From Sphaerodactylus townsendi (Eukaryota): a stretch of DNA of 64,000 bases. Shown piece after piece: positions 32,236 through 58,802 of the stretch (position 1 is the first letter of the stretch; every line of letters starts with the position of its first letter). Below the pieces are notes generated by a model that worked only from the letters and a program-made list of their open reading frames with translations, did no database searches and was not told where the DNA came from. The DNA lies in assembly GCF_021028975.2 (NCBI RefSeq), contig NC_059427.1, positions 121,582,001 through 121,646,000 on the forward strand. The letters run 5' to 3'. Position numbers and translations under genes: made by a program.

Positions 32236-33589
32236 GATTGGTGAGGCAGGAGTTTCATAGAGGGTGAGCTGATTTTTCCTTGAAATCTCTTGGTATGAGT
32301 CTGGAAAAGAAATACACAGAAGCAGCCAAAAGAACACACCATCCTTATCTTTCCTTTTTAGAGATTTCAAGCCACCTAAAAGTTCATTGCTGATAGTGTA
32401 ATGTGGGAAATGTTACAGATGTCAGAGGGATTCCAAGACACAAAGTAATTTCTCCAGCCAACTATACATTGGTGCTCTGCCCCACAGTGAAGATATGTTT
32501 CCTTCAGGGCAGAGTTTTGATTGTAGACATGCTCATTCTTACTGTGTGGCAGATCCCAGAAGCCCCGCAATTCCTGAGAGCAGGAAAACTCCAGTGTTTT
32601 CCCTGGCTTCAGGGTTTCTGCTACTCTCTATCTTCCCCTGTGCACTCCTTGCAAGGCATTTCCAGGAAACTGATGGGCAGCTTTTTTAAAAACAACAACT
32701 ACTAAAATTAATGTTAACGTGCCATTGTAGCAGGGATGGCACAATAGAATGATTTTAAAAATTAAAGGATTTTTTTTGGGGGAAAGTGGGAATCTAGCAA
32801 GTAACTGGAAATGACCCGGAAGTGGGAGCAGGCAAAATGACTGCAAGTTGCACAGTAGGCAGTGGGATACTTCCTTGTGTGTAAACAGAGAAATGCAAGG
32901 AGACCAATTATGAGCTAAAAGCTTTAGGGAAATGCATAATGGGCCTCCATTTCTAAGTACTGATGTGGAGAGAAAAAAATAAATGTAAAACAAATTCTCT
33001 AACCCTCCTAAATTATATGGTAAAAATGACCCATACCTCAAACAAGCCCAAAGTTAGTTATCACCTGCAAAGTTTCTACTTGCAAAAAAGGAGATAAATA
33101 AAAGGGGCACAATCCACCCAAAGTTAAGTACATATAAGTCTTATTGATTTCATGTCACCTCAGTGGGACATAAAAACTCTGCTTTGGCCAGGATTGTGAC
33201 CTTTTCCCCTCTTCATAATTGACGTTGAGAGACAAGTTAGTCAAGGATGTTTGTTTACTTACCACTTCCATGCTTTAGATCAGAGTGAAATCCAACTTGA
33301 CTTCTAAAGGTTCTTTCCATTTCTTCTCAGGTCTGGTATATAAAAGGAGTTTATTGCCATTAGAAATGTTCAAACGTTGAGCCTCATAGAGTTATATGCA
33401 GTTTTGTTCCAGAACAGTCCTGGTAAAGTATAAAATGAAAAGAAGAGATGTTATCCCAACCACTGCAGTCAGTACTATCTACTTTCCACCTCCTATTGGT
33501 GGCAAAATATGAACTAAAAATAATTGGCCTCTTTTCACAGACTAACCACCCTTGTTCCATCATTATGGAAAAGTAACCTGCTTTTGCCC

Positions 33590-33801
33590 GGAACCAATTC
33601 AGTTTGTCCTAACCTGGATGGCCCAGGACACAGGATTGGCCCTGGATAGTAATTGGATGGGAGACCACCAAGGCATACCAGAGTCTCTATGCAAAGGAAG
33701 GCAATGGCAAACCACCTCTGTCCATCTCTTGCCTTGAAAACCATACAGGGTCACCGTAAATTGGTTGTGACTTGAAAGCACTTTACACACACACACACAC
33801 A
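33590..33801 (+). mobile_element. 5S-rRNA-derived SINE with RTE/BovB-type tail
   Basis: 5S-like tggatgggagacc; tail gaaggcaatggcaaaccacctc...ttgccttgaaaacc and (CA)n. Confidence 0.65.
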
Positions 33802-33822
33802 ATTTCAGTTGAGCAGCATATT

Positions 33823-34063
33823 TAAAAGGCTTGGACAGATTTATGGAGGAGAAGTCGACCTATAGCTACCAATCTTGATCCTCCTTGATCTGAGACTGCA
33901 AATGCCTTGGCAGACCAGGTGCTCAGGAGCAGCAGCAGCAGAAGGCCCTTGCTTTCACATCCTGCATGTGAGCTCCCAAAGGCATCTGGTGGGCCACTGC
34001 GAGTAGCAGAATGCTGGACTAGATGGACTCTGGTCTGATCCAGCAGACTTTCTTATGTTCTTA
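33823..34063 (+). mobile_element. 5'-truncated CR1 3' end
   Basis: Near-identical to the reverse complement of 59836-60080; ends ttcttatgttcttat. Confidence 0.85.
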
Positions 34064-35398: not shown

Positions 35399-36426
35399 TC
35401 AGGGAAATTACATTAAATTAGGCTTGGCAACCTCCAGGTGGAGCCAGGATTACAGAGATGCTTCCATTTTTGTCTTATTCCTCCCAAAATACCAAGGGAG
35501 CAACCTGTTATCATCATTTTAAATGTGCATAACTTTTCTCAGCATTCTGCACAGTCCAACTACATACAAAGTGAGACCTCAAGACTATGGCTTAGGACAT
35601 TTTTCTCCCACACCCTTTCTTCAAAACAATTAACATAGTGAAGACTTCTGGAGAACTCCAACACTGTTTTGCGTCATTTTAACTGGTCTTGATAAGAAGT
35701 ATTATTAAAGGTAGTTTTAATTTGCTTTGAATAAATGTGGTTTCCTGCAATCACTTTGAAGGCAAGATGGTTGCTAGGAGGATAAATAATTAGAACATGG
35801 AGGCCAATGCGTTCAGTTTGCCATAATGCATCATTTTTATTTTCTTTATTACATATTTTCTCATGTCATACATCTAGCATGTTTTTGCAAGTAATTAGGT
35901 TTCTTAAAAGCTTTATTAGGTTCAAAAAGCCCATGCCAAAATTAATTATTGTCCCTTTTAATATCTAATTACTGATTAAAGTTAGACTACTTTTTATATT
36001 CATTTCCCACCTGGGGGGAATCAAATGCAAGACAGCAAAGGGCTCCTGAGCTGTGTCGAAAGGAAAGCTGTGAGGGTGCAGTTTCTGCAGGAGGTTAAGA
36101 GAATAACACCTGCTAAAAAGTGGGCTTTCTTCACAGTAGGATCAATAGCTGAATCTTCCAGTTACTCCTTTCCACTGGGGCAAGATTCCGAATAGAAAAG
36201 AATTGTTGGATATGACCAGGCAGCTTTATTTGTGTTTGCTGCAACTCCAGGGATTGAGGATTGCTTTGGGTTGACTGACACAATATAAGTTTCATGCAGT
36301 TAGGGCTGCTGGTGGGGGGAATAGGGGTACAAAATGCAAGGGTCCTGGTTATCCTGGGGGGTCAGGAAAGGTGCCACTGGAGGCTAGAGATTACAGCTCT
36401 GCATCCAGTGTTTTTTTGCTAGCAAT

Positions 36427-39400
36427 TTATTGTCTCCACTTTATAACAATAAATGTTAAAAAACAGATGGATAAAACCAAACGGGTATAATTTAGTCCCT
36501 TCTGCACACACTGTACAGTTTTATCCTGGAGGACTGGTTCATCCTGGTGTCCTTCTAAAACCAGATGTTTTCTGATCTGCTGCAGTTCCACACTCAGTCG
36601 TTTTAGAAGCACCAAGCTGTTTGCATTATCTGTTTCTGGCAAGGTACCTTCATTGATCTGCTTGTTCTCCATGGATGTCTCATCTGTCACATTTCCTGCT
36701 GGAATGAGGAAAATAAGGGCATTCATTATTTCTGATCTCCATACAGTGGGTTGGCTTCAGTGCAGTGTTCCATAGCTGAAAATATTGGCTGTGGAACACA
36801 ACTTTTGCTGTGCTTCATAGCAATCTGAAATACCCCCTGGAATTCTGTTTCTGAAGAAGGTGGGTCCCCAAAGAACAGGATTTACCTGGAATAATCACAG
36901 GGTCCACTGTTTTCTTTCTCCAGAACCTGCTCATACATTTCCTGTCCTTGAAGAAAAGGAAAGTTGGTTTCTTCTCATTGAGATACATCATCAGGAAGTT
37001 CTCCAGGATTCCAAGCACCATAAACATGAATATGCCAGTGAAATACATCACTACACAGATGAAAAAAACAGTGTGGCAAAAAATGGGCTTCACAGGCAGT
37101 TTTTTTAATGACCTCAGAGCCAAGCTGTTTATTCAAGGAGGATCATCATCATCAATAATTTAATTTTAGCATAAAAAGTGACCAACAGTGGCAGAAATTC
37201 ACAAATACATGTCATAACCACTGAAAACAAATTATGAAGTAGAATTGCTTGATTTTGTGTGTGGCTGGGGTAAGTAGAGTAGAAAGTAGGTTGAGCACCA
37301 TAAAATTGAAACACCTCAAAAAGGGTGATGGAAAGAGCTTTTGCTAGTGGTAAATTAAGGTGTCTTAAATCTAACTAATGGAAATAGGGTGTGGAATAGT
37401 TCAGCAGAATCTCAAGGAGCCATATGGAGACCATACCAAGTTGCAGCTGGGATCAATTACCACCTGTAAATTGTGGGTCATGCTGAGACATTAACACCTA
37501 CAGTATGTGAGGAAACTGAAGTCAAGTCTGGTCATTCTTGTATTTGTTAATTGACTATGTTTGAAGTATGTTTGAAGTACTTGATACTTAATTGAGTGTG
37601 TTTGATGCTACACTTCACAGTGTGGAGGAGGGGCTTAAGAAGATCTTTTCCATTCTCTTAACTCATGTAGGAATCACTGGGTGGACCCAGTGTTTGCTGG
37701 CCCTTTACTCTTAGCTCAACTGAACAATGAATTGAGAGCTGTCACAGCTAAGATATCTGCAAGACCCTGATGCAAAGAAAGCTCTGCTATTAATTCATAA
37801 GATGACCTTAGGCAAGTTATTCAACCTGAGTCCCCCATAATACAGGCCTATCTTACTGGGACATTGTAAGTACAGCAAGATAATATACATGAAGAAGTCC
37901 TTTGACTGTTTTAGGACGCTACCTAAATGCTTAATTTCAGTTTGACATAGTGTGAACTAATCTCTGGGACCTTCACAGATGGTATGACAGGCCCTAAATG
38001 CCACATGAAAACAAATCCACAGAAGCAAGGCATTTACCTATAACAGGTGGGTCATCTGATGTAGCTGGCAGCATTTCATTAAGGATCAATGACAGGACAG
38101 AAGTTTCCAGGATCAGTGTGACTTTGAAGGCAATCATATCTCCAGGAGAAACAACTGTAAAAGAAATAGCCGTATCTAGCAAAAAGAGAGTGAAGGTTGG
38201 TACGATCAGAACTAGCACGTGAAAAATCGACCTCCTTTTCATTGAAATCTGTCAAAAAAAGAGAGCAAAGATTATTACAGAGCATAATCTCTTTGGTCAT
38301 TCCTAACAAGAGCCTAAATTCTCAGCACACTTACAGTGCCAGCAAAGTTGTTACACCTTTCTAAGATGACTGAAGTCAATGGGTATAACCCTGATTAGGA
38401 TGGCACAATGGAATGCAAGGTCATAGTACTCTTGTTCCTAAAATTTTCCTTAATTCTCAGTTTAGCATGTTGTGGGGAAATCATGGAGCCACTGCCAAGC
38501 CTTAAGTAGGAACCGTAGGTAGAATTGACAAATCCAATGTGAAATTCCTGGAGATAGGGGCAGTGCTTAGACAGGGCAGTGTTGGTGGTGGGGCAGTGGG
38601 AGCTCTGCAAAAATGTGATTAGGCTTGCTAAGTAGATGTTGGAAAATTTCTGAAGATTTGGGGGTGGAACTGGGGATGATGCAACATGGGGAAGAGAGGG
38701 AACTCAGTGGAATATAAGGCCATGGAATCTGCCCACCAAAGCAGACATTTTCTCCACAGGAACCTTATCTCTGAAATCTGGAGATCAGTTGTAATTACAT
38801 CCAGATCAAAGCCCAGCCCTTCAGCTGTTCCTTTTCTTCAGAGGTCTTTCCCTCAGCAATCTTAAATTTAAAACGTATATTTCCTGCCTTGTATCACTCA
38901 ACCTGAAAAAACTCTGAAAACTGCCTCCAGGGTTTTCAGTCCCATAAGATACATCAGCCAACAGCAATCCTGTCCCTCTCTAAACTCCCACCTGGTCTCT
39001 GGCCTTTATTGTCTGTATATGTGAATCTTTATGGTCTACTGTAAGAGAAATGAAAGTCCCAGAGTATCCACTATGTCTAGGCACTTTAGGACTTCCATTT
39101 CTCCTAGGTTTTATGATTTCTCCAGATTTAAGAGATTCCATGAGAAGTCTAAGCCCCAACCATATCAGTAGAGCTTTTGGGAAGAGTCTAAAGTGGCTTC
39201 CCAGCACTGGGGTGATGCTCTGCCTGAGGTCTGTGGCTGTGAATAGATTTTCTCTTTTTTTTCTAACAGAGCTGCCCTTCTCTATGACATGGTAACCCAG
39301 CACGCAAAAAAAGTCAACAAGCGAAGTTCCCTACCACTGCAGCAGCTGATATTAGAAAAAGATACACTGTGAAATTATAACCTGTCATGTAGCTGCAGAA

Positions 39401-42400
39401 AGCACACAAACCCTGTCGGAAAAACAAAGAGAGAACGATGGCCATTTTATCTGCAAACGTTTTTTTCCAGCCACTTTTTATGTTGTTGACAGGACTTAGC
39501 TAGGGTTGCCAGGTCCCCCAGGCCACTGAAGGGGGACGAGGAGATAGATTTGCCCGATCCAGGCTGGGAAAAAACTCTCCAGGAGATTCGGGAGATGGAG
39601 CTTGGGAAAGGTAGGTACCTCAATGCCATTTAGGTGGCACAATGCCATAAACCCCCCAAAGACATAGATTTTCTTCAGAGGAGCGGATCTCTGTACTCTG
39701 GAGATGAGTTATACTTCTGAGCATCAGGCTCTTTAACACCATCAGCAGCACCTGGTATTCCAAAGGGAGATGGCTGAAAGATGAGGCTCATCTGCTTTTA
39801 CTAAGGAGCTTCTTTCAAGCCCAATCTACCCATTGAAGGAAAATGAAGTAAAGAGATTCTGAGATGATAAAGTGAGCTGTACTGCTTCAGCATGTAGGTG
39901 GGGAAATCTGTATTTTTAATGTTCTTTTCTGGAACAACATCCTGCACAATAAAAAAAATAGAACATTAGGGAGAAAGGTTCCAACCTAGATCTTCATATG
40001 CTGTGCCAATTTCCCATTTACAGTAGAACATTTGTAAATAGTGTAATCCCTCGTCTGCAGTCTGAAGCAGTGCAGTTCATTCTGCCACCTCATTACCACC
40101 CTTATCTTCTACATGTCTATATGTGCTTTGGACCCACTAAATAACAGTGTTCAGGTAGTATCTCTTCCAGTCCAGATTTCAATAATAATATTACCAGACT
40201 CAATGCATATTTACTTGGAAATAAATTTCAATGTGTTACACAGCTTTTCCTCCTATTTAAATACATACAGAATAACAGTCCCAAAGGTGTTGCCTGCTTT
40301 GATTGACATTGGGAGAAAGATGGTTAGAACTGACATAAATGAATAAATATGCCACTTAAACAATTATTTAGGATAAAAATGCACAACTGTAACATAATTA
40401 ACATAGGTTTTTAGAATGAGATGATCCCTTTTTTCTTTACTTCACAAAGTAGTGTGATTACCCTTTATTTAATAAATGGTGATACAAGTCTGCAAAGATA
40501 ACACAACTCAAATTTATACAGGGATAGTTTCTGTGTTATTCCTATATTTCCAGCATAAGAAAGCATTTGTAATGAATACCTCATATGTGACTGTACTGAA
40601 GTTCATCTTATAAGGAATTGTTTCCTCCACGATGCTCAGTTTTTCAAATTTCCATTCACCCTTTATGAGGTAATTCTCACGACTATCTTGGTTTGTCTTT
40701 TTGGAACTTTTAATGTTCTTCATTAATATTTGCTTATCTAAAATCAACAGAGGACACAAGTTTGCCACTTTAAGGACAAATGCCTATCATGTGCATCCTG
40801 AATGTGTAAAATGTTTGTAGAAAGTAAAATTCATAGAGATGTATTCTAGTCACAATTCTTTTTCAGTAGCTGCTCAAATTGCATGGTGTGAGATCATAGT
40901 AAGACCATAAGAACATAAGAAAGAGCCTGCTGGATCAGACCAGAGTCCATCTAGTCCAGCACTCTGCTACTCGCAGTGGCCCACCAGATGCCTTTGGGAG
41001 CTCACATGCAAGATGTGAAAGCAATGGCCTTCTGCTGCTGCTGCTCCTGAGCACCTGGTCTGCTAAGGCATTTGCAATCTCAGATCAAGGAGGATCAAGA
41101 TTGGTAGCCATAGATCAGGTGTCAGCAACCTTTAACACCCAAAGAGCCATTTGGACCCGTTTTCCATGGAAAAGAAAACACTTGGAGCCGCACTGATTTA
41201 TAGTGGCTAATAACCCATGGCAGCAACTAATTTTAGAGGTTCCTAACTCTTGAGACACTAGGGTATGTGAATGAAGGAGCAAAAATGTACAAGGAACAGC
41301 AGTCATATGGAGAATGGAAGAAAGCATGTAGGTGTTGAAGAAAGTGGATAGACCATGAAGGATGCACACAAGATGCGGGGGCTGCAGACGTAAGTGAGAA
41401 AGGGATGAAATCTGAAGATGAACATAAATCAAATGGCGTACATGATAGAGGGAATATTCAAAAATATTTTAGGTGGATGGGGAGAAGAAAATCCTAGCTG
41501 AAAAAATATGACCATGTTTAGCTGGGTTACCTGAATGCATCGAAGACATCAAAGTTAAATTGCATTTTTGTTCATCGAAAGGAAATGCATGGACATCCAG
41601 ATTGCAAGTTGAGGTGAGTCGATATACTTGGAATGCACAAACAGTACCATTGTATGACAAGTCAACATAGGGGCTGGATGTGAATTTGTCTTCATCAGCC
41701 CTAAAGACATGGGATTTTAATCAGGCAGGGGTTGTATTTTGCACATATTAGACAATCTAGGACTTTGGCATCTATGTGAACTTTCTCCATATCTATGCAA
41801 TCATCAGCTGATTCTGCACAACCAAAATAAGATGTCCTAGGGTCGTCTTAAAAAAAAGTATCCTCATTTTTTGTCTGGAGAGGACAAAAATGAAGCGTCT
41901 GAGGAGAGAGCAGTTTTTCCCCCCACCCCAAACTGCAAGCTCTCACTTTTGTTTTCTTCGGTTAGCCATTTTGTGAGACTTGGATCCTCCATGCTGCCCG
42001 CCATTTGATGAAGTTGCCTTAGGACATTTTCTCTGTAGGCATCTTGGCTGATCTTTTCAGTGAATACAGTTCAGGAATTGACTCTTTTTTTCCTGCTGAT
42101 TCCAGCAATATATAGTTTTCAATTAAAAAAAACTTTGATGAAGTGTCTTTGAAGCCATGATATATGAGAGTGACTATGATTCTCATATCGTGTCATTGTG
42201 GCTTTGAAGACACCTCATCAAAAATATTTTAAAATCCTGAAAACTACATATTGCTGGAATCAACAGGAAAGGCTGAGTTGATGCATATACTTTATTCACT
42301 GAAATGATGCCCAGCTGAAATGCCTGCAGAGCAAGGGACCCAGGGCAACTTCACCAAATCGTGGGCGGCATGGAGGATTCAAATCTCACAAAATGGCCAG

Positions 42401-43344
42401 CGGGACAAAACAACCGTGAGAGCTTGCAGTTTGAGAAGGAGAAATATCACCTATCCTGAGCTCTGCCCAGCAAGCAGGAGATGACTTGTAGCTGACTTGG
42501 GGAAAAAGATACCTAGTTTAGCATCCTCAAAATACACTGGCTTGAGCAGGAAAAAAAACAATCTGAGGGCTTCTTCCTCCCCAAGACCCTGTTTTTTCCC
42601 ATCTTCAGGCTGTTTTATTTGTGCTGTGCCGAATGGGTCATTAATAAAGGATATATATACATAGTAAGAGACTTAATAAATTATGTTTCTGGTAGGAGAA
42701 CTGTTAATTTAACCAAGTCCTTGTGGATTCTTTAAGTTTTGATTTTTAACAATTTTCATGGAATATGCCTGCTGTTACAGAACATGTCTGAGACTACTCA
42801 GTATCAAAAGTGCACTTTATTCTGATGCTGAAATGCTACATCACTTAAATGTCTAAAAGTCTAACTATATTGTACAAGTTGACAATGATAAAATAAGAAT
42901 TTGAGTAGTAAAATGAATTTGAGATTCCCCTTAAACTGAAATTTCACTTCAATTTGAAATTTTGGTTCACATCAACTACTTGGATGCGGGGAGTTGCCAT
43001 GAACTGAGTCTGAAAATAATGAGAAAATGGAAAGAAAGCCACCTTACCGTTCATCTATGTAGACGTCAGGCATCCAGAAAAGGTTTACAGGAAGGCTGAT
43101 TCTGGTAATATTACAGAAATCTGAGGGATTCCAGGAAACAAACTCATTGTTCCAAATCTAGTGGAGGTGAAAATTAGGTAAATCATTAGCTTGAGAAGTT
43201 TAGTTTGAGTTCTCTTGGAGGATGGATCTGATTGTCATATACAGAGGAAGAAAAAAGCGTGCCTTACCAGATTGAGCCAAAAATAGAATGTGACCACTTG
43301 CAATTTTTCATTCTGGAAGGATGAATGAAAATAAGAATATATCT

Positions 43345-43387
<43 letters not shown>

Positions 43388-48066: not shown

Positions 48067-48483
48067 TGATGTGATTTGGCAAGTGCCAGTCACACAATCC
48101 AGTAATGAAGGAGTTAATGTTGTGCATGCAAATTAGTTAGTTAGGTCAGAAGTCAGTGACCAAGTAATCGACCCCTATTGGTCAAGCAGACCCGGCATGA
48201 GATACATGCAAGTCTGCACGTAGACAATAGGTATATAATCTTTGTTACTCTCTGCTCATGCTCTCTAGTAGCTCTTTAGCAATGTGATAGCCAAAGTAGA
48301 AGCTAGCTGATGAAGCTAGCCAGATAGAAAGATATTTTATTGTTTTGCTCCCAAGTTTATCTTTCCCTTCTTTTATAGATAGTAAACTCTAGTTTCAGTA
48401 AGCAACTGTTTCTGCCTCTTTATTGTGCAAACTCTGCATATCTAAGAAGTGTGATATAATTATCACAACTGAGAATCACTTCA
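48067..48483 (+). mobile_element. Solo LTR downstream of the copy B stop codon
   Basis: TG...CA termini (tgatgtga / tcacttca); 5-bp TSD cttct; TATA near 48232 and AGTAAA near 48381; absent at the matching site in copy A (about 35990). Confidence 0.85.
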
Positions 48484-48697
48484 CTTCTCATATTAATTTC
48501 CCCCCTGGGGTGGTCAAATGCAAGACAGCAAAGGGCTCCTGAGTTGTGTCAAAGTGAAAGCTGTGATGTGCGTAGTTTCTGTCACCAAAGTGGCAGAAGG
48601 ATAGGAGAATAACGCCTGCTAAAAGGTGGCCTTTCTTCACAATAGGATCAATAGCTGGATCTTCCAGTTACTCCTTTCCACTGGGGCAAGATTCCTA

Positions 48698-48838
48698 GGC
48701 CCCTTCCGCACACGCAAAATAATGCGTTTTCAAACCACTTTCACAACTGTTTGCAAGTGGGTTTTGCTATTCCGCACAGCTTCAAAGAGCACTGAAAGCA
48801 GTTTGAAAGTGCATTATTCTGCATGTGCGGAATGAGCC
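48698..48838. mobile_element. Harbinger-like MITE (copy B 3' region only)
   Basis: Inverted copy of 35258-35398; empty site near 36190 in copy A. Confidence 0.7.
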
Positions 48839-49053
48839 TAATATTGAACCAGGCAGCTTTCTTTGTGTTTGCTGCAACTGCAACTCCAGTGATTGATGAT
48901 TGCTTTGGGTTGATTGACCCAATATAAGTTTCATGCAGTTAGGGCTGTTAGTGGGAGGAATAGGGGTATGAAATGCAAGGGTCCTGGTTATCCTGGGAGG
49001 TCAGGAAAGGTGATAGAGTACAGCTCTGCATCCAGTGTTTTTTTGCTAGCAAT

Positions 49054-52000
49054 TTATTGTCTCCACTTTATAACAATAAATGTTAAAAAACAGATGGATA
49101 AAACCAAACGGGTATAATTTAGTCCCTTCTGCACAAAGAATACAGTTTTATCCTCGAGGATTGGTTCATCCTGGTGTCCTTCTAAAACCAGATGTTTTCT
49201 GATCTGCTGCAGTTCCACACTCAGTTGTTTCAGAAGCACCAAGCTGTTTGCATTATCTGTTTCTGGCAAAATACCTTCATTGACCTTTTTGTTCTCCATG
49301 GATGTCTCATCTGTCACATTTCCTGCTGTATGGAAGAAAATAAGGGCATTCATTTTTTTCTGACCTGCATGCAGTGGGTTGGCTTCAGTGCAGTGTTCCC
49401 ATAGCTGAAGGTATTGTCTGTGGAACACAACTTTTGCTGTCCCTCATGGCAGTCTGAAATGCCCTCTGAAATTCTGTATCTGAAGAAGGTGGGTCTCTTA
49501 AGAACAGGATTTCAAGGGATATTTCATGCCGATGCGGAAGTGGGAACTGACAGAATCATGCTCCGCAGGTTCTTGCGCCCACATAAATGCTTTGCTGGAT
49601 TTAACTCATTGTTTCCCATACTGAAAACTGTATCAAAATTTTACCTGGAATAATCACAGGGTCCACTGTTTTCTTTCTCCAGAACCTGCTCATACATTTC
49701 CTGTCCTTGAAGAAAAGAAGGTTTGGTTTCGTCTCATTGAGATACATCATCAGGAAGTTCTCCAGGATTCCAAGCACCATAAACATGAATATGCCAGTGA
49801 AATACATCACTATACAGAAGAAAAAAACAGTGTGGCAAAAAATGGGCTTCACAGGCAGTTTTTTTAATGACCTCAGAGCCAAGCTGTTTATTCAAGGAGG
49901 ATCATCACTATCATCATCAATAATTTAATTTTAGCATCAAAAGTGACTAACGGTGGCAGAAATACACAAATACATGTCATAACCACTGAAAACAAATTAT
50001 GAAGTAGAATTGCTTGGTTTAGTGTGTGGCTGGGGTAAGTTGAGTAGAAAGTAGGTTGAGCACCATAAAATTGAAACACCTCAAAAAGGGTGATAGAAAG
50101 AGCCTTTGCTAGTGGCAATTTAAGGTGTCTTAAATCTAACTAATGGAAATAGGGTGTGGAATAGTTAAGCAGACTCTCATGGAGCATTATGGAGACATAT
50201 CAGGTTGCAGCTTGAATCAATTAGCACCTGTAAATTGTGGGTCATGCTGAGACATTAACACCTACAGTATGTGAGGAAACTGAAGTCAAGTCTGGTCATT
50301 CTTGTATTTGTTAATTGACTATGTTTGAAGTATGTTTGAAGTACTTGATACTTAATTGAGTATGTTTGATGCTACACTTCACAGTAAGGAGGAGGGGCTT
50401 AAGAAGATCTTTGCCATTCTCTTAACTCATGTAGGAATCACTGGGTGGACCAAATGTTTGCTGGCCCCTTACTCTTAGCTCAACTGAACAATGAATTGAG
50501 AGCTGTCACAGCTCAGATATCTGCAAGACCCTGATGCAAAGAAAGCTCTGCCATTAATTCATAAGATGACCTTAGGCAAGTTATTCAACCTGAGTCCCCT
50601 ATAATACAGGCCTATCTTACTGGGACATTGTAAGTACAGCAAGATAATATACATGAAGAAGTCCTTTGACTGTTTTAAGACACTACATAAATGCTTAATT
50701 TCAGTTTGACTTAGAGTGTGAATGGATCTCTGGGACCTTCCCAAATGATATGACAGGCCCTAAATGCCACATGAAAACAAATCCATAGAAGTAAGGCATT
50801 TACCTATAACTGGTGGGTCATCTGATGTTGCTGGCAGCATTTCATTAAGGATCAATGACAGGACAGAGATTTCCAGGATCAGTGTGACTTTGAAGGCAAT
50901 CATCTCTCCCGCAGACACAACTGCAAAAGAAATAGCCATATCCAGCAAAAAGAGAGTGAGGGTTGGTACGATCAGAACTAGCACGTGAAAAATCGACCTC
51001 CTTTTCATTGAAATCTGTCAAAAAAAAGAGAGCAAAGATTATTACAGAGCATTAATCTTTTTGGTCATTCCTAACAAGAGCCTAAATTCTTAGCACTCTT
51101 ACAGTGTCAGCAAAGTTGTTACACCTTTCTAAGATGACTAAAGTCAATCAGTATAGCCAGTGGCGGGATCCAAAAATTTTAGTAACAGGTTCCCATGGGG
51201 GTGGGATTCAAACTGTGGCGTAGCGCCAATGGGGCTGGGCGGGGCATTCCGGGGGCGTGGCCGGGCATTCCGGGGGCGGGGCATTCCTGGGCGGGGCTGT
51301 GGCAAGGATGCAGCCGCTGCACCGGTCCTTGGGCGGGAAACTAATGCACGCAGGGGCAGGCTGCCACGCACACCGGTGCACCTCCTGCTAGACTGCTTCA
51401 AGTTCTGCGCGCTGCTGCTGAGAGGAGGGGCGTAACTAAGGCAAAAATCACATGGCAAAATCACCCATTAGTAACCCCCTCTCGGCACACACAAATAATT
51501 AGTAACCTACTCTCGGGAACCTGTGAGAACCTGCTGGATCCCACCTCTAAGTATAGCTCTGATTAGAATGGCATTTAATGGAATGCAAGGCCATAGTGAT
51601 CTTTTTCCTGACATTTTCCCTAATTCTCATATTGTGGGGAAATAATGGAGCCACTGCCAAGCCTTAGGTGGGAACAATAGGTAGGGCTGACAAATCCAGT
51701 GTGAAATTCCTGGAGATAGGGGCAGTGCTTAGACAGGGCAGTGTTGGTGGTGGGGCAGTGGGAGCTCTGCAAAAATGTGATTAGGCTTGCTAAGTAGATG
51801 TTGGAAAATTTCTGAAGATTTGGGGGTGGAACTGGGGATGATGGAACTTGGGGAAGAGAGGAAACTCGGTAGACTATCAGGCCAAGGAATCTGCCCACCA
51901 AAGCAGCCATTTTCTCCACAGGAACTGATCTCTGAAATCTGGAGATCAGTTGTAATTACATCCAGATCAAAGCCCAGCCCTTCAGCTGTCCCTTTTCTTA

Positions 52001-55000
52001 AGAGGTCTTTCCCTCAGCAATCTTAAATTTAAAACGTATATTTCCTGCCTGGTATCACTCAACCTGAAAAAGCTCTGAAAACTGCCTCCAGGGTTTTCAG
52101 TCCCATAAGATACATCAGCCAACAGCAATCCTGTCCCTCTCTAAACTTCCACCTGGTCTCTGGCCTTTATTGTCTGTATATGTGAATCTTTATGGTCTAC
52201 TGCACAGGTGTCAAACTCGCGGCCCTCCATATGTTATGGACTACAGTTCCCATCATCCCCTGCCAGTATGATGCTGGCAGGGGATGATGGGAACTGTAGT
52301 CCACAAACCCCCACCCCCACCCCCAACATAGATTTTCTTCAGGGGAGCAGATCTCTGTACTCTGGAGATGGGTTATAATTCTGGAGGATCCTCAGAGCTC
52401 ACCAGGAAGTTAGCATTTTTAGTCTAAAATGAAAGATTCTGTTTTAACCAACACCATGTATAAAATACTAACAGTATTCACTCAGACACATGCTTATTGA
52501 TGAACATACTTATTTCCAAGGAAGTACGTTTAGGATTATAGCCTTAATTATACTGCACATCATACTTAGTTAAACCCAAGAAATAACACCATCCTCATTA
52601 TTTAGTGTGGCACCCAAATAGATTTGAGATCTGAGGAGATGCCTTCATCAATCACAGCTCCCACAGCATCTTCAACAGCCAGCACCACCAAAAGTTCAGA
52701 AATCTGGCAGTCATTGATGCTACGTGACCAGTGCAGCAGCAGTAGCGGCAAGAGCACCTAGAGGTTTGGGAAGTGGACTCTGAAGACCATCCGGCCCCAT
52801 ATTTCCAATGACAGCTGCTCAGGAAAAACAGAATCAGGAGGAGCTGCAGCATTTGAGCATCAGCGTAGGCTTTTTAACACCATCAGCAGCTCCAAAGGGA
52901 GATGAGGCTCATCTGCCTTTAGTAAGGAGCTTCTTTCAAGCCCAATCTACTCATGCAGAAGAATGAAGCAAATGGGATTCTGAAATGATAAAATGAGCTG
53001 TACTATTTCAGAATGCATGTGGGGAAATCCGTATTTTTAATATTATTGTTTGGAAAAAACTTCCTGCACAATAAAAATTAGAACGTTAGGGAGAAAGGTT
53101 CTAGCCTAGACCTTCATATGCTGTGCCAATTTCCCATTTACAGTAGAACATTTGTTAACAGTGTAATTGATGTGAATCTTAGTTGTGATAATTATATCAC
53201 GCTTCTTATAAATGCAGAGTTTGCACAATAGAGTGGCAGAGGCAATTGCTTACTGAAAATAAAGTTTACTGACTATAAAAGAAGGGAAGGGTAAACTTGG
53301 ATACAAAACAAGAAAATATCTTTCTAACTGGCTAGCTCCATTAGCTAGCTTGTGCCTGGCTATCACATGGCTAATAAGCTACTAGAGAGCAGGTGCAGAA
53401 AGTAACAAAGGATATATACCCATTGCTTACATACAGATCTGCATGTAGACTTGGCTGACCAATGGGGGTCAATTACCAGGTCACTAACTTCTGACCTCAC
53501 TAACTAATTAGCATGCACGATATTAACTTCTTCATTATTGGATTGGGTGAATGGCACTTGCAACAGTAATCCCTCGCCTGCTTCTGTTCATTCTGCCACC
53601 TTGGTATTCTGCCCCTCTCATTGCCACCTTGATCTTCCACATGTCTAGAACGTGTTTGAGACCCGCTAGATAACAGTGTTCAGGTAGTATCTCTTCAAGT
53701 CCACTGAAACACTTCAAAAGGCTTATCCATTTCAGGACAATATTGTCTACCTATTGAGTGATTTTATTATTGTGAATAACTTTGAGAGCTATTGTGGCTA
53801 AAAAGTGGTATGCGAGTATTATAAACCTACCAGCCATCACCTATTTCAATAATAATATAACCAGACTCAATGCATGTTTACTTAGAGGTCAATATGTATA
53901 GAATAACAGTCCCAAAGGTGTTGCCTGCTTTGATTGACATTGGGAGAAAGATGGTTAGAAATGACATAAATGAATAAATTTGCCACTTAAACAATTATTT
54001 AGGATAAAAATGCACATATAATTTAGCATAGGTTTTTAGAATGAGATGATCATTTTTTCTTCAGAAAGTAGTATGTTTAGAAAAAACCCTATATTTAATA
54101 AATGGTGATACAAATCTGCAAAGATAACACAACTCAAATTTATGCAGAGATAGTTTCTATGTTATTCCCATATTTCCAACATAAGCAAGCAAGCATTTGT
54201 AATGAATACCTCATATACAACTGTACTGTAGTTATCATCGTAAGGGACTATTTCCTCCGTGATCCTCAATTTTTCAAATTTCCATTCACCCTTTATGAGG
54301 TAATTCTCACGACTATCTTGGTTTGTCTTTTTGGAGCTTTTCATGTTCTTCATTAACATTTGCTTATCTAGAATCAACAGAGGACACAAGTTTGCTACTT
54401 TGGGGACAAATGACTATCATGTGCATCATGGACATGCAAAATGTTTGTAGAAAGTAAAATTCATAGAGATGTATTCTGGTCACAATTCTTTTTCAGTAGC
54501 CGCTCAAATTGCATGGTGTGAGATCATAGTAAGAACATAAGAACATAAGAAAGAGCCTGCTGGATCAGACCAGAGTCCATCTAGTCCAGCACTCTGCTAC
54601 TCGCAGTGGCCCACCAGATGCCTTGGGGAGCTCACATGCAGGATGTGAAAGCAATGGCCTTCTGCTGCTGCTGCTGCTCCCAAGCACCTGGTCTGCTAAG
54701 GCATTTGCAATCTCAGATCAAGGAGGATCAAGATTGGTAGCCAGAGATCGACATAGATCTATGGTAGACATAGATCCTCCCTAAATCTGTCCAAGCTCCC
54801 TTTAAAGCTATACAGGTTAGCGGTCAATTGTATCCAGGTTAGTGGCCATTTGTAAAATTTGTATCAATAGTAAACTGATTTATAGTGGTTAATAACCTGT
54901 GGCAGCAACTAATTTTGGAGGGACACTAGGGTATGTAGGTGAAAGAGCAAAAATGTACAAGGAACAGCAGTAATATGGAGAATGGAGGAAAGCGTGTAGT

Positions 55001-58000
55001 TGCTGAAGGAAAAAGGAAAGTGGATAGAGGATGAAGGATGCACACAGGATCATGCAGAGGCTGCAGACATAGGTGAGAAAGGGATGGAATTTAGAGATGA
55101 ACATAAATCAAATGGGGTACATGATAGAGGCAATATTCGAAAATATTTTAGGTGGATGGGGAGAAGAAAATCCTAGCTGAAAAATTTCACCATGCTTAGC
55201 TGGGTTCAAAGGCGTAGCAAGGGGGAGAAGCGCCCAGTGACCAATGTGTCCTCCGCCCTGTCCCACCCCGCCAGGCCCCCGCCCCGGAACGCCCCCACCA
55301 TGCCCTTGCCACACTCCCACATGGGCGAACACCAAGTGCGTTGCGCCCCCCCCTGCCCCACCTCCCACTTGAAGCTACGCCTCTGGCTGGGTTACCTGAA
55401 TGCAAACTAGATGTGAAAGTTAAATTGCATTTTTGTTCATCGAAAGGAAATGCATGGACATCCAGGTTGCAAGTTGAGGTGAGTCGATATATTTGGTGTA
55501 CAAAAACAGAACCATCGTATGACAATTCAACATAGGGGCTGGATGTGAATTTGTCTTCATCAGCCCTAAAGACATGGGATTATAATCAGGCAGGGGTTGT
55601 ATTTTGCACATATTAGGCAATCTAGGACTTTGGCATCTATGTGAGCATTCTCCATATCTATACAATCATCGGCTGATTCCGCATAACCAAAATAAGATGT
55701 CCTGGGGAACCTGTCTCCTCATTTTTTGTCTGGAGAGGACAAAAACGAAGCGTCTGAGGAGAGAGCAGTTTCCCCCCCCCAGCCCAAACTGCAAGCTCTC
55801 ACTTTCATTTTCTTCAGTTAGCCATTTTGTGAGACTTGGATCCTCCATGCCGCCTGCCATTTGATGAAGTTGCCTTAGGACATTTTCTCTGTAGGCATCT
55901 TGGCTGGGCATCTTTTCAGTGAATAAAGTACAGGAATTGACTCTTCTTTTCCTGCTGATTCCAGCAATATATAGTCTTCAATTTTTTTCAAAAAAACCTG
56001 AATCTCCCACCCTTCAGCTTCAGTAACAAAAGTGTACTTTATTCGGATACTGAAATGAAACATCACTTAAATGTCTAACCATATTGTACACATTAACAAT
56101 GACAAAATAAGAATTTGAGTGGTAAAATAAATTTGAGATTCACCTTGAACTGAAATTTCACTTCAATTTGAATTTTTTTTTAACACCAACTACTTGGATG
56201 CAGGGAATTGCCATGAAAATGTTTGTATTGAAATTCAGTACTTGAATCTGAGCTGTGAATTTACTCAGGTTTTATCCCCACTTGAAATTTGCACGCAGAT
56301 CCAAACCTGTTTGTTGTGAAACCGTGTCCTCTTCATCAGAGTTTCTCCCTCCCCACTGCAGCGAGCACACAGCAGACACACCCCGGTTGCAGAACTCTTA
56401 GCAATCCCCACTACCAGGCGAGCTTGCTTCGCCATTCTCCCCTGATTGGCTGGCATGCCTTGATGGGGTGGGACCTTTTCCCACTGTGGAAACGTACATT
56501 GTAGGGGCGTGATAAAAAAACCAGCATGTAAAAGTTTAATGTTTAACTGTTTAACTGTATAAACAGTTAATCATTACCTGTGTAAACCATTAACAATTCA
56601 AAGTTACTCGTTTGACTATTTAACATTTGCATACCCTTCACAAAAGCGGAAATGAAACCAAGGAAAGGCTGCGCACGCATCTCAGCGCTGATTGGTTGCC
56701 CGAATTACATGTCACACTCCAGGGTGGGAAACGAGTCAGGGTTTCAACTCTCATCCCTCCCCTCGGATCAGCTCTGAACCGTGTTAATGGGGTCTATGCC
56801 ACTTGCAACTAGGTCCTGCCGAAACGCGGATTAACTGGGAGAACGAGCGCCAGAAACGGAATCTGCCACCCAAGCAATGGGGAGGTCGTCCCTCAAACCT
56901 GGTTAGTTTGTGTTCTGAAACCTGGCTAAGACGCTAGTGGGGATTCGACCTCAGATTGATTCCTATTTTGTAGAAGAAGAACTGAAGAGGAGATAGCAAT
57001 TTGAGTAGATCCTTTCCAATTTATCCTTAGCTCAGCTGACATTTAAACTGAGGTCCAAGTTCAGCATGCAATCTGTTGCCTGCAAAACATGTGGCCACCA
57101 ACCAGAATACAGACCACCAGTCATGTACTATGATGACCTGCCAAGTACTTCATATTTCCCACCCCAGGGTTACCAGTCCTATGAAGGCAATAAAAAGAAG
57201 GTGAGCCAAGAAATGGCCTGAGGGACTGCCGTTGTCTTCATGGAGAGCAAAATATTCAGTCCTACTCTGTCCTAGTTCTTTGATATCTGATTTCTTCTAC
57301 TAAGGGGCACCCCATACTTCTATGATACATCTTACAAATCTGAATATGTGTGCTTTTGTGTCAGTAGTATCAATGGGGCAGAATACTGATTTTTCTTGTA
57401 AAAAGGTTTGGAATAGAAGAGAAAGAAAATTCAAGCTACCTTTTAAGGTTGATATTTGGATTGCATTTCAGGCAAGTTAGCTCTAATGTTTTTTAACTAA
57501 CCACCACATACTGGTAGATCAATTTTTCTTTTTCCAAGCATATGTCAGGTGCTCCAAAAAAAAGGTCAACCCTTGGAGCAAAATTCACAGGAACTTCCAA
57601 TTTATCTCCTGTATTTATACTAATCTCATGACCCAGCATTCTTAAACCTCTGCCTATGATTTTAGGGTTTTCAGTGTCTGGACATGAGAATGGTAATTTG
57701 AACTTACTTTATATGGTTGCAGTAGGGAAAGCAATCACATGAACAGAGTCTGAAAATAATGAGAAAATGGAAAGAAAGCCACCTTACCGTTCATCTATGT
57801 AGACGTCAGGCATCCAGAAAAGGTTTACAGGAAGGCTGATGCTGGTAATATTACAGAAATCTGAGGGATTCCAGGAAACAAACTCATTGTTCCAGATCTA
57901 GTGGAGGTGAAAATTAGGTAAATCAATTAGCTTGAGTTTAGTTTGAGTTCTCTTGGAGGATGGATCTGATTGTCATAAAAAGAGGAAGAAAAAAGCATGC

Positions 58001-58083
58001 CTTACCAGATTGAGCCAAAAATAGAATGTGACCACTTGCAATTTTTCATTCTGGAAGGATGAATGAAAATATGAATATATCTT

Positions 58084-58141
<58 letters not shown>

Positions 58142-58802
58142 TTGCACTAAATAGGGACAAAGTAGATGAAATTATTCAAAAACTATTTACCCTCCCTTGG
58201 GTGGAAAAGTGGCACTGCTAGACTTTGAGAGCTGCAAGTGTGGCTGATGAACAAGTAAATGAGCGTTCTGCATCCTGACAGCTTACATATCTAATAGAGT
58301 TCCCACCACTAGCAACTATTTTGCCCTTTTGTTGTTCTCTAATATTTAAGCTAGTTCCATTATAAACAAGAGAGTGACATGTTTCTCTTACTACAGAAAG
58401 GATGGAAACCAGGGTGAACTCCAGACCAACTTCCAAAGGTTCTTTCCAGTTCCTCTTGGGTATGGTGTATGAGAAAAGTTCCTTATTAGCAGACAGGTTC
58501 AGATGCTTAGCCACATCATAATATCTACAGATCTCCTCTGGTGTGATTTCTGAGTGAAAGGAGAACAATAGCAAGATTCAGTACCGTTTCATAAAAAGCA
58601 AAATCACATACCTCATTCTTCTTCACCTGCTTAGCTGTTCACAATCATATTGAAAGCTAGTGGAAAATTGCTGGTCTTCACTCCTCGGTGAATCTATGAT
58701 CATTCTTGATTTGGTTGCTGTGTGGAAGGATAAGAAGTTGCTTCAACCTGTCTTACCTGACACAGAAAAGATTAGAAAAATAATTGCAGCAGCTCTCCAC
58801 AT
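49054..58802 (-). CDS. Orphan pentameric ligand-gated ion channel subunit, 5-HT3 receptor/ZAC-family-like, copy B (443 aa)
   Basis: Exons 58802-58757, 58549-58392, 58050-58006, 57897-57788, 55565-55396, 54367-54210, 51014-50804, 49809-49645, 49322-49054 (46,158,45,110,170,158,211,165,269 = 1332 nt), GT-AG, open frame. About 40 amino-acid differences from copy A outside the signal peptide. Confidence 0.92.
51158..51549. mobile_element. Non-autonomous hAT in copy B intron 6
   Basis: Termini cagtggcgggatcc / ggatcccacctcta; perfect TSD agtatagc; empty site near 38381 in copy A. Confidence 0.85.
53168..53565 (-). mobile_element. Solo LTR, same family as 48067-48483, opposite orientation
   Basis: TG...CA termini; 5-bp TSD gtaat; empty site near 40042 in copy A. 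Confidence 0.85.
55207..55385. mobile_element. hAT MITE beside the copy B exon 5 donor
   Basis: Termini caaaggcgtagc / gctacgcctctg; perfect TSD gctgggtt. Confidence 0.85.
56268..56950. mobile_element. Harbinger-like non-autonomous element in copy B intron 4
   Basis: Imperfect TIR ggttttatccccact / agtggggattcgacc flanked by a 3-bp tca repeat. Confidence 0.55.

What the first reader, a model, noticed from the sequence alone, without database searches (positions are those of the whole stretch)
32349..58802. Tandem birth-and-death cluster of orphan 5-HT3/ZAC-like Cys-loop channels next to ATP5PD
Seen: two intact 9-exon genes plus an older pseudogene, all in tandem on the minus strand. Known (recalled): the 45/110/170/211-nt exons match HTR3A gene structure, and in human/mouse ATP5PD is followed by MRPL58 with no such channel between them. 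Inference: this is a reptile-retained or lineage-expanded pLGIC subfamily with copy turnover and non-serotonergic binding sites. Such turnover is atypical of synaptic receptors and resembles Cys-loop receptors co-opted for sensing, such as cephalopod chemotactile receptors derived from nAChRs.
Basis: partly seen in the sequence, partly recalled or inferred. Interest (0 to 1): 0.85.

Follow-up and report, generated by a model that had tools for sequence, protein, structure and literature searches.

The report
Duplicated 5-HT3-like channel genes, gecko
Two recently duplicated, intact genes for a serotonin-receptor-like ion channel subunit, plus a dead fragment of an older sister gene, sit beside ATP5PD in a gecko; the family occurs in the same place in birds, turtles and amphibians, no mammalian member turned up, and nobody has tested what it does.

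Summary
The minus strand carries two intact 9-exon Cys-loop channel genes. Copy A is 36427-44061 (445 aa) and copy B is 49054-58802 (444 aa). There is also a two-exon relic at 32379-33451. The N gap (45843-46010) lies between the two genes and touches no exon.

The window is Sphaerodactylus townsendi. Copy A is already in RefSeq as a partial "5-HT receptor 3A-like" model. I found no protein record for copy B.

The genes are not orphans and are not reptile-specific. They belong to an orthogroup found between MRPL58 and ATP5PD in a macaw, next to ATP5PD in a turtle and a caecilian, and next to MRPL58 in a leopard gecko. No mammalian member turned up.

- **Duplication:** A and B are a gecko-lineage duplication: 90% aa identity, dS 0.08, dN/dS 0.65.
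- **Relic:** it best matches a second, older squamate paralogue.
- **Closest structure:** 5-HT3A (about 36% identity by eye, 179 bits for the leopard-gecko orthologue). ZAC is far weaker.
- **Pore and binding site:** the pore is cation-type. The loop-B tryptophan needed for amine binding is serine.

I could not test function or expression. This is a new member of a known kind, of moderate interest.

The parts
49054..58802 (-). Copy B: intact 9-exon 5-HT3-like Cys-loop subunit gene (444 aa). No protein record was found for it.
   Evidence: Exons 58802-58757, 58549-58392, 58050-58006, 57897-57788, 55565-55396, 54367-54210, 51014-50804, 49809-49645, 49325-49054. All introns are AG/GT. Pfam LBD in exons 4 and 5. 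No S. townsendi protein other than the copy A model appears.
36427..44061 (-). Copy A: intact 9-exon paralogue (445 aa). It is 100% identical over 332 aa to RefSeq XP_048343367.1.
   Evidence: Exons 44061-44013, 43791-43634, 43312-43268, 43157-43048, 41700-41531, 40737-40580, 38248-38038, 37050-36886, 36698-36427. Identity to P0002.
33239..33451 (-). Pseudogene relic, exon-2-like, with two in-frame stops.
   Evidence: tblastn. Best hits are the squamate clade b proteins P0176 (66.2 bits), P0011 (65.5) and P0173 (58.2). Clade a scores 45-50 bits.
32379..32462 (-). Pseudogene relic, exon-4-like, ending in a premature stop. Exons 5-9 are absent.
   Evidence: Only about 1 kb remains between this piece and the ATP5PD stop codon.
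45843..46010 (.). Assembly gap (168 N) in the spacer between copy A and copy B.
   Evidence: No exon lies within 1.7 kb. Not filled.
35455..45842 (.). Duplicated unit A.
   Evidence: Self-blastn. Collinear with the single-copy Eublepharis locus L002.
47538..59814 (.). Duplicated unit B. Its upstream continues to at least 63977 with extra insertions.
43114..43892 (.). Low-divergence tract (2-3%) over exons 2-4. Probable gene conversion.
   Evidence: Sliding-window divergence. Flanks and the exon 5-6 region are at 8-12%.
36880..38379 (.). Low-divergence tract (3-6%) over exons 7-8. Probable gene conversion.
25941..31323 (+). ATP5PD, converging on the channel cluster.
   Evidence: Motif scan. Pfam Mt_ATP-synt_D on three exons, E 2e-11 to 1.7e-14.
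24158..24520 (-). First coding exon of a KCTD2-like BTB gene, head to head with ATP5PD.
   Evidence: ORF. Pfam BTB_2. Same gene order in macaw and turtle.

Best explanation
What it is (shown). The window is the MRPL58-side flank of ATP5PD in the gecko Sphaerodactylus townsendi.

- It holds two tandem paralogues (A, B) of a conserved non-mammalian vertebrate gene for a Cys-loop, cation-type pentameric channel subunit of the 5-HT3 branch.
- It also holds the decayed 5' remnant of a second, older squamate paralogue (clade b).
- A and B arose by a roughly 12-kb tandem duplication within the sphaerodactylid lineage, after its split from the Eublepharis and Heteronotia lineages.
- Both reading frames have been kept open by selection.
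- Gene conversion has homogenised exons 2-4 and 7-8. The exon 5-6 block, which encodes binding loops E, B, F and C, keeps the full divergence and changes its amino acids at nearly the neutral rate.

How it most likely works (inferred).

- Each protein is a subunit with a signal peptide, a ligand-binding domain with a 15-residue Cys-loop carrying FPFD, M1-M4, a -1' Glu/Asp, a 9' Leu gate and a 20' Glu. That is the make-up of a cation channel.
- It cannot bind an amine agonist on its own principal face in the canonical way, because the loop-B aromatic (Trp in 5-HT3A and alpha7) is Ser.
- My preferred mechanism, at about 40%, is an accessory subunit. It would supply the pore and a complementary face (the loop-D Trp is kept) in heteromers with another 5-HT3-type subunit, as mammalian 5-HT3B-E do.
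- The confidence given below covers the identity and evolutionary statement, not this mechanism.
For: - **Gene models and selection on the frames:** both models are intact. Under neutral change at the observed divergence, both frames, splice sites and start/stop codons survive in fewer than 0.2% of simulations.
- **Species and annotation:** copy A is 100% identical over 332 aa to XP_048343367.1 of S. townsendi.
- **Tree** (73 rows, alpha7 outgroup): A+B are sisters (100*), inside the geckos (100*), inside squamate clade a (100*). Separate from these are squamate clade b, a crocodile, birds+turtles and caecilians. Frogs fall in several places, and the fish form their own clade.
- **Synteny:**
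  - macaw: MRPL58(RF-1) > gene > ATP5PD < KCTD2;
  - turtle: pLGIC > pLGIC > ATP5PD < KCTD2;
  - caecilian: gene > ATP5PD;
  - leopard gecko: MRPL58 > gene;
  - Hemicordylus: a > b adjacent;
  - a Phrynocephalus gene prediction fuses the channel with an RF-1 domain.
- **Closest solved structure:** 5-HT3A at 179 bits, against alpha7 at 114. ZAC is below the best 60. For exon 7 alone the scores are 39.4, 34.8 and 22.7 bits.
- **Selection:** A-B dN/dS is 0.65 overall, 0.94 in exons 5-6 and 0.31 in M1-M3. Against Eublepharis the values are 0.47-0.51 overall, 0.23-0.41 in the scaffold and 0.70-0.96 in exons 5-6.
- **Key residues:** loop-B Ser, kept loop-D Trp, pore residues.
- **Conservation across squamates:** binding loops are 46-48% identical, against 71-86% for the scaffold.
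- **Conversion mosaic:**
- **Relic assignment:**
Against:
- The only RefSeq model of copy A is an odd isoform without exons 1-3 and M4. This could mean poor or aberrant expression.
- Overall dN/dS of 0.5-0.65 is high for a receptor under strong constraint.
- No canonical HTR3A-E or ZACN sequence could be obtained. The position of the orthogroup relative to those genes therefore rests on PDB scores alone.
- The accessory-subunit mechanism is inference. Amphibian and fish relatives keep an aromatic at loop B, and birds keep Phe there but lose the loop-D Trp. The family is not uniformly 'accessory-like'.
- Adjacency of A and B crosses an unread gap.
Confidence: 0.75

Rival explanations
1. The subunits form channels (homomers or A/B heteromers) gated by something other than serotonin, such as a metal ion, protons, another small molecule or a peptide. 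The tandem copies would then be diversifying their ligand range, as sensory receptor families do.
For: - The loop-B aromatic is lost in all squamates and the crocodile, while the channel scaffold is conserved.
- Binding loops E, B and C are the most variable parts, and dN/dS there is near 1.
- Tandem turnover occurs in several lineages.
- The Ser at loop B is kept through a TCN-to-AGY codon switch.
- Zebrafish htr3a-like transcripts are reported enriched in lateral-line hair cells (bioRxiv 10.1101/2022.08.31.505989). One such gene is the top marker of a gill cell cluster that the authors call neurons (PMC9203529).
Against: - dN/dS near 1 fits relaxed constraint just as well, and no site test for positive selection was run.
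- Part of the excess divergence in exons 5-6 comes from conversion elsewhere in the gene.
- The zebrafish genes were not shown to be orthologues.
- There are no ligand or expression data for any member.
Confidence: 0.3
2. They are ordinary serotonin-gated 5-HT3 receptors (functional equivalents of HTR3A) with a tolerated binding-site variant.
For: 5-HT3A is the closest solved structure. The loop-A Glu, the loop-D Trp and a loop-C aromatic are kept. The automated annotation calls them 3A-like.
Against: - Identity to 5-HT3A is only about 36% (my estimate by eye from the alignment printed).
- Loop-B Trp is Ser, and the loop-E Tyr positions and loop-D Arg are replaced.
- The locus is conserved from caecilian to bird and, from memory, is not the HTR3B-HTR3A locus.
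- Evolution is fast.
Confidence: 0.1
3. One or both copies are no longer functional: young unprocessed pseudogenes that have not yet picked up a disabling mutation, or transcribed only as aberrant RNAs.
For: dN/dS is 0.65 between the copies. The RefSeq isoform of copy A lacks M4 and exons 1-3. Copy B has no protein record. Clade b has already died at this locus.
Against: - Neutral simulation gives less than 0.2% (at a total A-B divergence of 0.03) and fewer than 1 in 20,000 (at 0.05 or more) for both copies staying fully intact.
- The only indels in 1.3 kb of coding sequence are two insertions in copy A's exon 1 (1 nt and 2 nt). Together they keep the frame.
- M1-M3 and exons 2-4 show dN/dS of 0.3-0.4.
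- Nonsynonymous to synonymous counts are similar on both branches (19/7 and 25/10).
Confidence: 0.1
4. The tandem duplicate is an assembly artefact, such as a haplotig placed beside its allele across the gap.
For: A gap sits exactly between the two units.
Against: The units differ by 2-12% in aligned sequence, with different large insertions in introns 4-6 and 8. This is far above allelic variation. There are 45 amino-acid differences.
Confidence: 0.03

Closest known systems
5-HT3A receptor subunit (HTR3A; e.g. PDB 4PIR, 6BE1, 8BL8)
   Same: It is the best-scoring solved structure. Both have nine coding exons (from memory for HTR3A). Shared features are the Cys-loop with FPFD, -1' Glu, 9' Leu, an acidic 20' residue, no vicinal Cys in loop C, an MA-type helix before M4 and a very short tail after M4.
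   Different: - Identity is only about 36% over the binding domain to M3 (by eye).
- Loop-B Trp is Ser, loop-D Arg is Asn, the loop-E Tyr positions are Glu and His/Phe, and loop C is shorter.
- The three MA-helix Arg that limit conductance are not kept. This is by eye, where that stretch did not score significantly.
- The chromosomal locus is different.
5-HT3B-E accessory subunits of mammals
   Same: From general knowledge: divergent 5-HT3-branch subunits that need 5-HT3A to form working receptors, evolve fast, and (HTR3C-E) sit in a tandem cluster with lineage-specific loss. This is the working model I prefer for how the gecko proteins act.
   Different: No sequence of 3B-E could be obtained, so neither relatedness nor shared residues were tested. 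The gecko genes lie at MRPL58-ATP5PD, not at the HTR3B-HTR3A or HTR3C-E loci (from memory).
Zinc-activated channel (ZAC/ZACN; PDB 8WGE)
   Same: A cationic Cys-loop channel with a non-amine agonist. From memory, human ZACN lies in 17q25.1, about 1 Mb from ATP5PD. A fish relative of the gecko genes lies beside a TSEN54-like gene, which from memory is another 17q25.1 marker.
   Different: Sequence similarity is much weaker than to 5-HT3A or to nicotinic subunits.
Unnamed '5-hydroxytryptamine receptor 3A-like' genes of sauropsids and amphibians (e.g. XP_048343367.1, and P0165 of Eublepharis)
   Same: The gecko genes belong to this orthogroup. They share the locus and the clade, at 45-73% identity within sauropsids.
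   Different: Here the gene is duplicated and the second squamate paralogue is dead. I found no paper that describes the group.
Cephalopod chemotactile receptors (nicotinic-derived sensory pLGICs)
   Same: Analogy only: tandem expansion and loss of the canonical agonist-binding aromatic.
   Different: They are not related beyond the superfamily. There is no evidence here for sensory expression or for hydrophobic ligands.

Membership tests
Cys-loop pentameric ligand-gated ion channel superfamily | Extracellular ligand-binding domain (Pfam Neur_chan_LBD) | tested here: met
   Exon 5 of both copies scores 40-41 bits (cut-off 26). Exon 4 scores 26.7 bits.
Cys-loop pentameric ligand-gated ion channel superfamily | Two Cys 13 residues apart with the FPFD motif | tested here: met
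   Read directly in both models. Invariant across the family alignment.
Cys-loop pentameric ligand-gated ion channel superfamily | Four membrane helices M1-M4 (Pfam Neur_chan_memb) | tested here: met
   M1-M2 are in exon 7, M3 in exon 8 and M4 in exon 9. The exon-7 Pfam hit is below cut-off when searched alone (21.2 and 17.7 bits against 28.1). Full-length orthologues carry PF02932.
Cation-selective branch (5-HT3 / nicotinic / ZAC) | Acidic -1' residue without a -2' Pro insertion, 9' Leu, acidic 20' | tested here: met
   M2 alignment. Glu (B) or Asp (A) at -1', Leu at 9', Glu at 20'.
HTR3A orthologue | Loop-B Trp that makes the cation-pi contact with serotonin | tested here: not met
   Ser in A (TCG), B (AGT) and Eublepharis (TCT).
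HTR3A orthologue | Groups with canonical HTR3A in a tree, to the exclusion of other HTR3 genes | not tested
   No canonical HTR3A-E sequence could be obtained as a tool reference. As a proxy, there is only 179 bits to the solved 5-HT3A (about 36% identity by eye), while the family has its own orthologues back to caecilians.
HTR3A orthologue | Conserved position beside HTR3B | tested here: inconclusive
   The gene sits between MRPL58 and ATP5PD in the macaw, and next to ATP5PD in the gecko window, a turtle and a caecilian. No pLGIC other than family members is nearby. That HTR3A lies elsewhere is from memory only.
ZAC (ZACN) orthologue | Closest similarity to ZAC among Cys-loop receptors | tested here: not met
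   ZAC scores 22.7 bits against 39.4 for 5-HT3A on exon 7. ZAC is not among the best 60 PDB hits of the orthologue P0165, all of which score 85 bits or more.
MRPL58-ATP5PD '5-HT3A-like' orthogroup (unnamed) | Same flanking genes and orientation | tested here: met
   ATP5PD and KCTD2 are in the window. The neighbours match in other species. MRPL58 itself is not inside the window.
MRPL58-ATP5PD '5-HT3A-like' orthogroup (unnamed) | Monophyly with the sauropsid and caecilian members | tested here: met
   quick IQ-TREE with SH-aLRT support only. Squamate clade a 100*. A 48-row group (all amniote rows, both caecilians and one frog) 99*.
Birth-and-death multigene cluster | Lineage-specific duplicates together with pseudogenised members | tested here: met
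   The A/B duplication is gecko-specific. Separate duplicates occur in lacertids and turtles.
Birth-and-death multigene cluster | Copies diverge independently (no concerted evolution) | tested here: not met
   Two tracts of 2-6% divergence lie within units otherwise 8-12% diverged. This points to gene conversion.

The most novel reading that the evidence does not exclude
The MRPL58-ATP5PD genes are a distinct, ancient class of vertebrate Cys-loop channel that mammals lost. In squamates, which replaced the loop-B aromatic, the channel would be gated by a non-amine cue. The tandem copies would be diversifying their binding loops, making this a vertebrate counterpart of sensory pLGIC expansions.
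Probability: 0.2. Interest if true: 0.7.

Novelty: new member of a known kind. Interest (0 to 1): 0.42.

Why it matters
The pharmacology of vertebrate Cys-loop receptors is built on the mammalian gene set. Here is a conserved subunit gene with a fixed address (between MRPL58 and ATP5PD) in birds, turtles, squamates and caecilians. No mammalian member was found, and no functional study was found either.

In squamates it lacks the tryptophan that every characterised amine-gated member uses. The gecko locus gives two natural variants that differ mainly in the binding loops, a ready-made pair for expression studies. If the subunits modify 5-HT3 receptors, 5-HT3 pharmacology in non-mammals differs from the mammalian model. 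If they have their own ligand, a new vertebrate channel class opens up.

On present evidence it remains an uncharacterised member of a well-known superfamily.

Tried and rejected
- **A possible transcript.** A Logan contig that looked like one (P0003/L007) is genomic DNA of another gecko, because its match runs into the introns. It is not expression evidence.
- **A possible promoter.** An apparent conserved upstream element (61148-61421 against Eublepharis) also occurs at 32046-32202. It is a repeat, not a promoter.
- **MRPL58.** Its exons were not found in 59-64 kb of the window.
- **Canonical references.**
  - The one representative search returned only hits that score above where mouse 5-HT3A would fall.
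  - The three homologue searches returned only family members and alpha7.
  - I could therefore bring no canonical HTR3A-E or ZACN sequence into the session by reference.
- **The joined model.**
  - The spliced proteins were not sent to any search, fold or database tool. Those searches were made exon by exon by reference, or with the full-length leopard-gecko orthologue P0165 as a stand-in.
  - The exons were joined only inside local scripts that read window.fa, for translation, local BLAST, dN/dS and the tree.
- **Intron alignment.** Global MAFFT alignment of introns overstated divergence where large insertions differ. I replaced it with the sliding-window profile.
- **Neighbours of clade b.** Flanks fetched for Hemicordylus and Eublepharis did not reach ATP5PD, and no clade b relic was seen in the 10 kb downstream of the Eublepharis gene.
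- **Fish and frog synteny.** Sturgeon and Bombina look-ups gave no neighbours.
- **Literature.** Seven full-text searches found no description of this clade.

Full report
**1. The observation**

A self-comparison of the window shows two collinear units, 35455-45481 and 47538-59814, at 79-95% identity. Stop-free segments on the minus strand repeat in both units.

Using AG/GT boundaries and reading phase, I built two complete 9-exon models. Copy B is 58802 to 49054, 1335 nt, 444 aa. Copy A is 44061 to 36427, 1338 nt, 445 aa. Exon lengths are 46 (49 in A), 158, 45, 110, 170, 158, 211, 165 and 272 nt. Pfam recognises Neur_chan_LBD in exons 4 and 5, and Neur_chan_memb in exon 7, the latter below cut-off when searched alone.

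ATP5PD is on the + strand at 25941-31323. A KCTD2-like first exon lies head to head with it at 24158-24520.

**2. The gap**

The 168 N (45843-46010) lie in the spacer between the genes. They are 1.78 kb upstream of copy A's start codon and 3.04 kb downstream of copy B's stop, so no exon or frame crosses them.

The left flank matches copy B's far upstream (63735-63977, 92%). It also matches the homologous place in the leopard-gecko locus. The right flank has no counterpart inside the window.

Continuity is therefore plausible but unproven. Only the physical adjacency of A and B depends on it.

**3. How the searches were run**

Database searches used single exons by reference, or the full-length leopard-gecko orthologue. 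The exons were joined only inside local scripts that read window.fa.

**4. Species and annotation**

An exon-7 search of the representative library and a cluster look-up led to XP_048343367.1, [quoted passage not shown]. It is 100% identical to copy A over 332 residues. The window is therefore from that gecko, and copy A is already in RefSeq.

That model is odd:
- It starts in an alternative exon inside intron 1 (43898-43854) and skips exons 1-3.
- It leaves exon 9 at an internal donor (36517/36516) for a 4-codon exon at 34487, so it lacks M4.

Such junctions look transcript-derived, but I could not check this. No protein matching copy B turned up.

**5. The family**

Homologue searches returned relatives from many groups: squamates, a crocodile, turtles, birds, caecilians, frogs and fish. 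Nearly all are auto-named "5-HT receptor 3A-like". None is mammalian.

A 73-row tree rooted on alpha7 (quick IQ-TREE, SH-aLRT support only) gives this placement:
- A and B are sisters (100*).
- They sit inside the geckos Eublepharis and Heteronotia (100*).
- These sit inside a 19-row squamate clade a (100*) that roughly follows the species tree.
- A second squamate clade b (Hemicordylus, Podarcis, Lerista), the crocodile, a bird+turtle clade and the caecilians follow. Frogs fall in several places, and the fish form their own clade.
- Turtles and lacertids have their own duplicates.

**6. Synteny**

- Macaw: MRPL58 (RF-1) > gene > ATP5PD < KCTD2.
- Turtle: pLGIC > pLGIC > ATP5PD < KCTD2.
- Caecilian: gene > ATP5PD.
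- Leopard gecko: MRPL58 > gene.
- Hemicordylus: a > b adjacent.
- A Phrynocephalus prediction even fuses the channel with an RF-1 domain.

The gene thus has a fixed address across tetrapods. It agrees with the lack of mammalian hits.

**7. The pseudogene**

Only two pieces survive. The exon-2-like piece (33451-33239) has two stops. The exon-4-like piece (32462-32379) ends in a stop.

The exon-2 piece scores best with clade b proteins (58-66 bits) and lower with clade a (45-50 bits). It shares a short signature seen only in clade b. It also occupies the position that gene b holds in Hemicordylus, downstream of a and toward ATP5PD.

I read it, at about 70%, as the remnant of the ancient b paralogue and not an old copy of A/B. 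Exons 5-9 are deleted.

**8. Relation to known receptors**

The leopard-gecko orthologue is 73% identical to A and B. Its PDB scores are 179 bits to 5-HT3A, 125 bits to an invertebrate acetylcholine receptor and 114 bits to alpha7. ZAC is not among the best 60. Exon 7 of copy B alone gives 39.4, 34.8 and 22.7 bits for 5-HT3A, alpha7 and ZAC.

The family therefore belongs to the 5-HT3 branch, at roughly 36% identity to 5-HT3A (my estimate by eye from the alignment). It is not ZAC-like.

I could not place it relative to HTR3B-E, because no such sequence was obtainable by reference.

**9. Residues**

From the alignments:
- **Pore:** Glu/Asp at -1', Leu at 9', Glu at 20'. This is a cation-type pore with the usual gate.
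- **0':** Met in geckos and Hemicordylus. It is Lys or Arg in nearly all other members, including every outgroup row.
- **10':** Glu. This is shared with the crocodile, clade b and several clade a lizards, so it is not gecko-specific.
- **Kept binding-site residues:** the loop-D Trp, the loop-A Glu and a loop-C aromatic.
- **Replaced binding-site residues:** the loop-D Arg, the two loop-E Tyr and, most importantly, the loop-B Trp.
- **Loop B across the family:** Ser in A (TCG), B (AGT) and Eublepharis (TCT). It is Ser, Thr, Ala or Pro across squamates and Thr in the crocodile. Birds have Phe. Turtles are mixed (Phe, Ile, Val, Asp). Several frogs, one caecilian and one fish have Tyr, and the other caecilian has Trp.
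- **Inference:** squamate subunits lack the aromatic that makes the cation-pi contact with amine agonists in 5-HT3A and nicotinic receptors (established knowledge of those families).

**10. Selection**

- **A against B:** 90% amino-acid identity, dN 0.055, dS 0.084, ratio 0.65. By region the ratio is 0.39 in exons 2-4, 0.31 in M1-M3 and 0.94 in exons 5-6.
- **Against Eublepharis:** the ratio is 0.47-0.51 overall, 0.23-0.41 in the scaffold, and 0.70-0.96 in exons 5-6.
- **Branches:** both carry similar nonsynonymous to synonymous counts (19/7 and 25/10).
- **Across squamates:** loops E, B and C are 46-48% identical, against 71-86% for the Cys-loop, M1-M3 and exons 2-4.
- **Neutral simulation:**
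  - It used the observed divergence with an intron-derived indel rate.
  - Both copies stay fully intact in 0.17% of runs at a total divergence of 0.03.
  - None of 20,000 runs stays intact at 0.05 or more.
  - The frames are therefore being maintained.

The divergence profile is a mosaic. It is 2-3% over exons 2-4 and 3-6% over exons 7-8. It is 8-12% in both flanks and around exons 5-6, introns included. Gene conversion has probably homogenised two tracts. The extra divergence of the binding-loop exons is therefore partly regional, not proof of positive selection.

**11. Interpretation**

With good confidence, these are two maintained, recently duplicated members of a conserved non-mammalian 5-HT3-like orthogroup, beside the dead b paralogue.

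The mechanism is inferred. They are cation-channel subunits that cannot form a canonical amine site on their own principal face.

| Reading | Weight |
|---|---|
| Accessory subunit in heteromers, after the precedent of 5-HT3B-E | about 40% |
| Channel with a different ligand | about 30% |
| Ordinary serotonin gating | about 10% |
| Loss of function | about 10% |
| Other readings | the remainder |

Two papers report fish htr3a-like transcripts. They are enriched in lateral-line hair cells (bioRxiv 10.1101/2022.08.31.505989), and one is the top marker of a gill cell cluster that the authors call neurons (PMC9203529). Orthology to this family was not shown, so these are leads only.

**12. Novelty**

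The genes are new members of a known superfamily. One copy is already auto-annotated. Copy B, the relic, the conserved locus and the loop-B loss appear undescribed in the literature I could search.

The scan's other notes on this stretch agree with what I measured. They cover loop-B Ser codons, M2 residues and divergence in exons 5-6. My one qualification is the conversion mosaic.

Noticed in passing
window 43854-43898, 36516-36525 and 34473-34489: The RefSeq model of copy A (XP_048343367.1) uses an alternative first exon inside intron 1 joined to exon 4. It also uses an internal donor in exon 9 joined to a 4-codon terminal exon 2 kb downstream. The predicted protein therefore lacks exons 1-3 and M4.
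   Followed up: partly
window 33821-34067, 40893-41116, 54523-54826, 59822-60103: Four copies of a repeat of about 220-300 bp at 85-95% identity, inside and around the channel genes. Probably a young interspersed element.
   Followed up: no
window 2379-2621 and 27887-28142; L002 at several places: A second short repeat, about 86% identical within the window and 81-92% identical to copies in the leopard-gecko locus. It is a repeat family shared by both geckos.
   Followed up: no
window 61187-61421 and 32046-32202: A segment that at first looked like a conserved upstream element shared with Eublepharis also occurs near the pseudogene, so it is a repeat.
   Followed up: yes
window 58080-58150 and 43340-43400: A (CT)n/(GA)n microsatellite in intron 2 of both copies, just upstream of the 45-nt exon.
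   Followed up: no
L004 (Mauremys reevesii) 3875-4060: A second ATP5PD exon-2-like fragment lies between the turtle's two tandem channel genes. The turtle duplication may have carried part of ATP5PD along.
   Followed up: no
L008 (Plectropomus leopardus) and L009 (Gambusia affinis): A fish '3C-like' relative lies beside a TSEN54-like gene (tRNA_int_end_N2). From memory, TSEN54 is another human 17q25.1 marker. Gambusia has three family genes in a row.
   Followed up: no
window 24158-25941: The KCTD2-like and ATP5PD first coding exons are head to head, about 1.4 kb apart, in a GC-richer stretch. This is a likely shared bidirectional promoter, and the same arrangement is seen in macaw and turtle.
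   Followed up: partly
window 44900-45350, 46100-46500, 51150-51470, 55100-55400: GC-rich stretches with long spurious ORFs on both strands, in the spacer and in introns 5 and 6 of copy B. They may be copies of one element, but I did not compare them.
   Followed up: no
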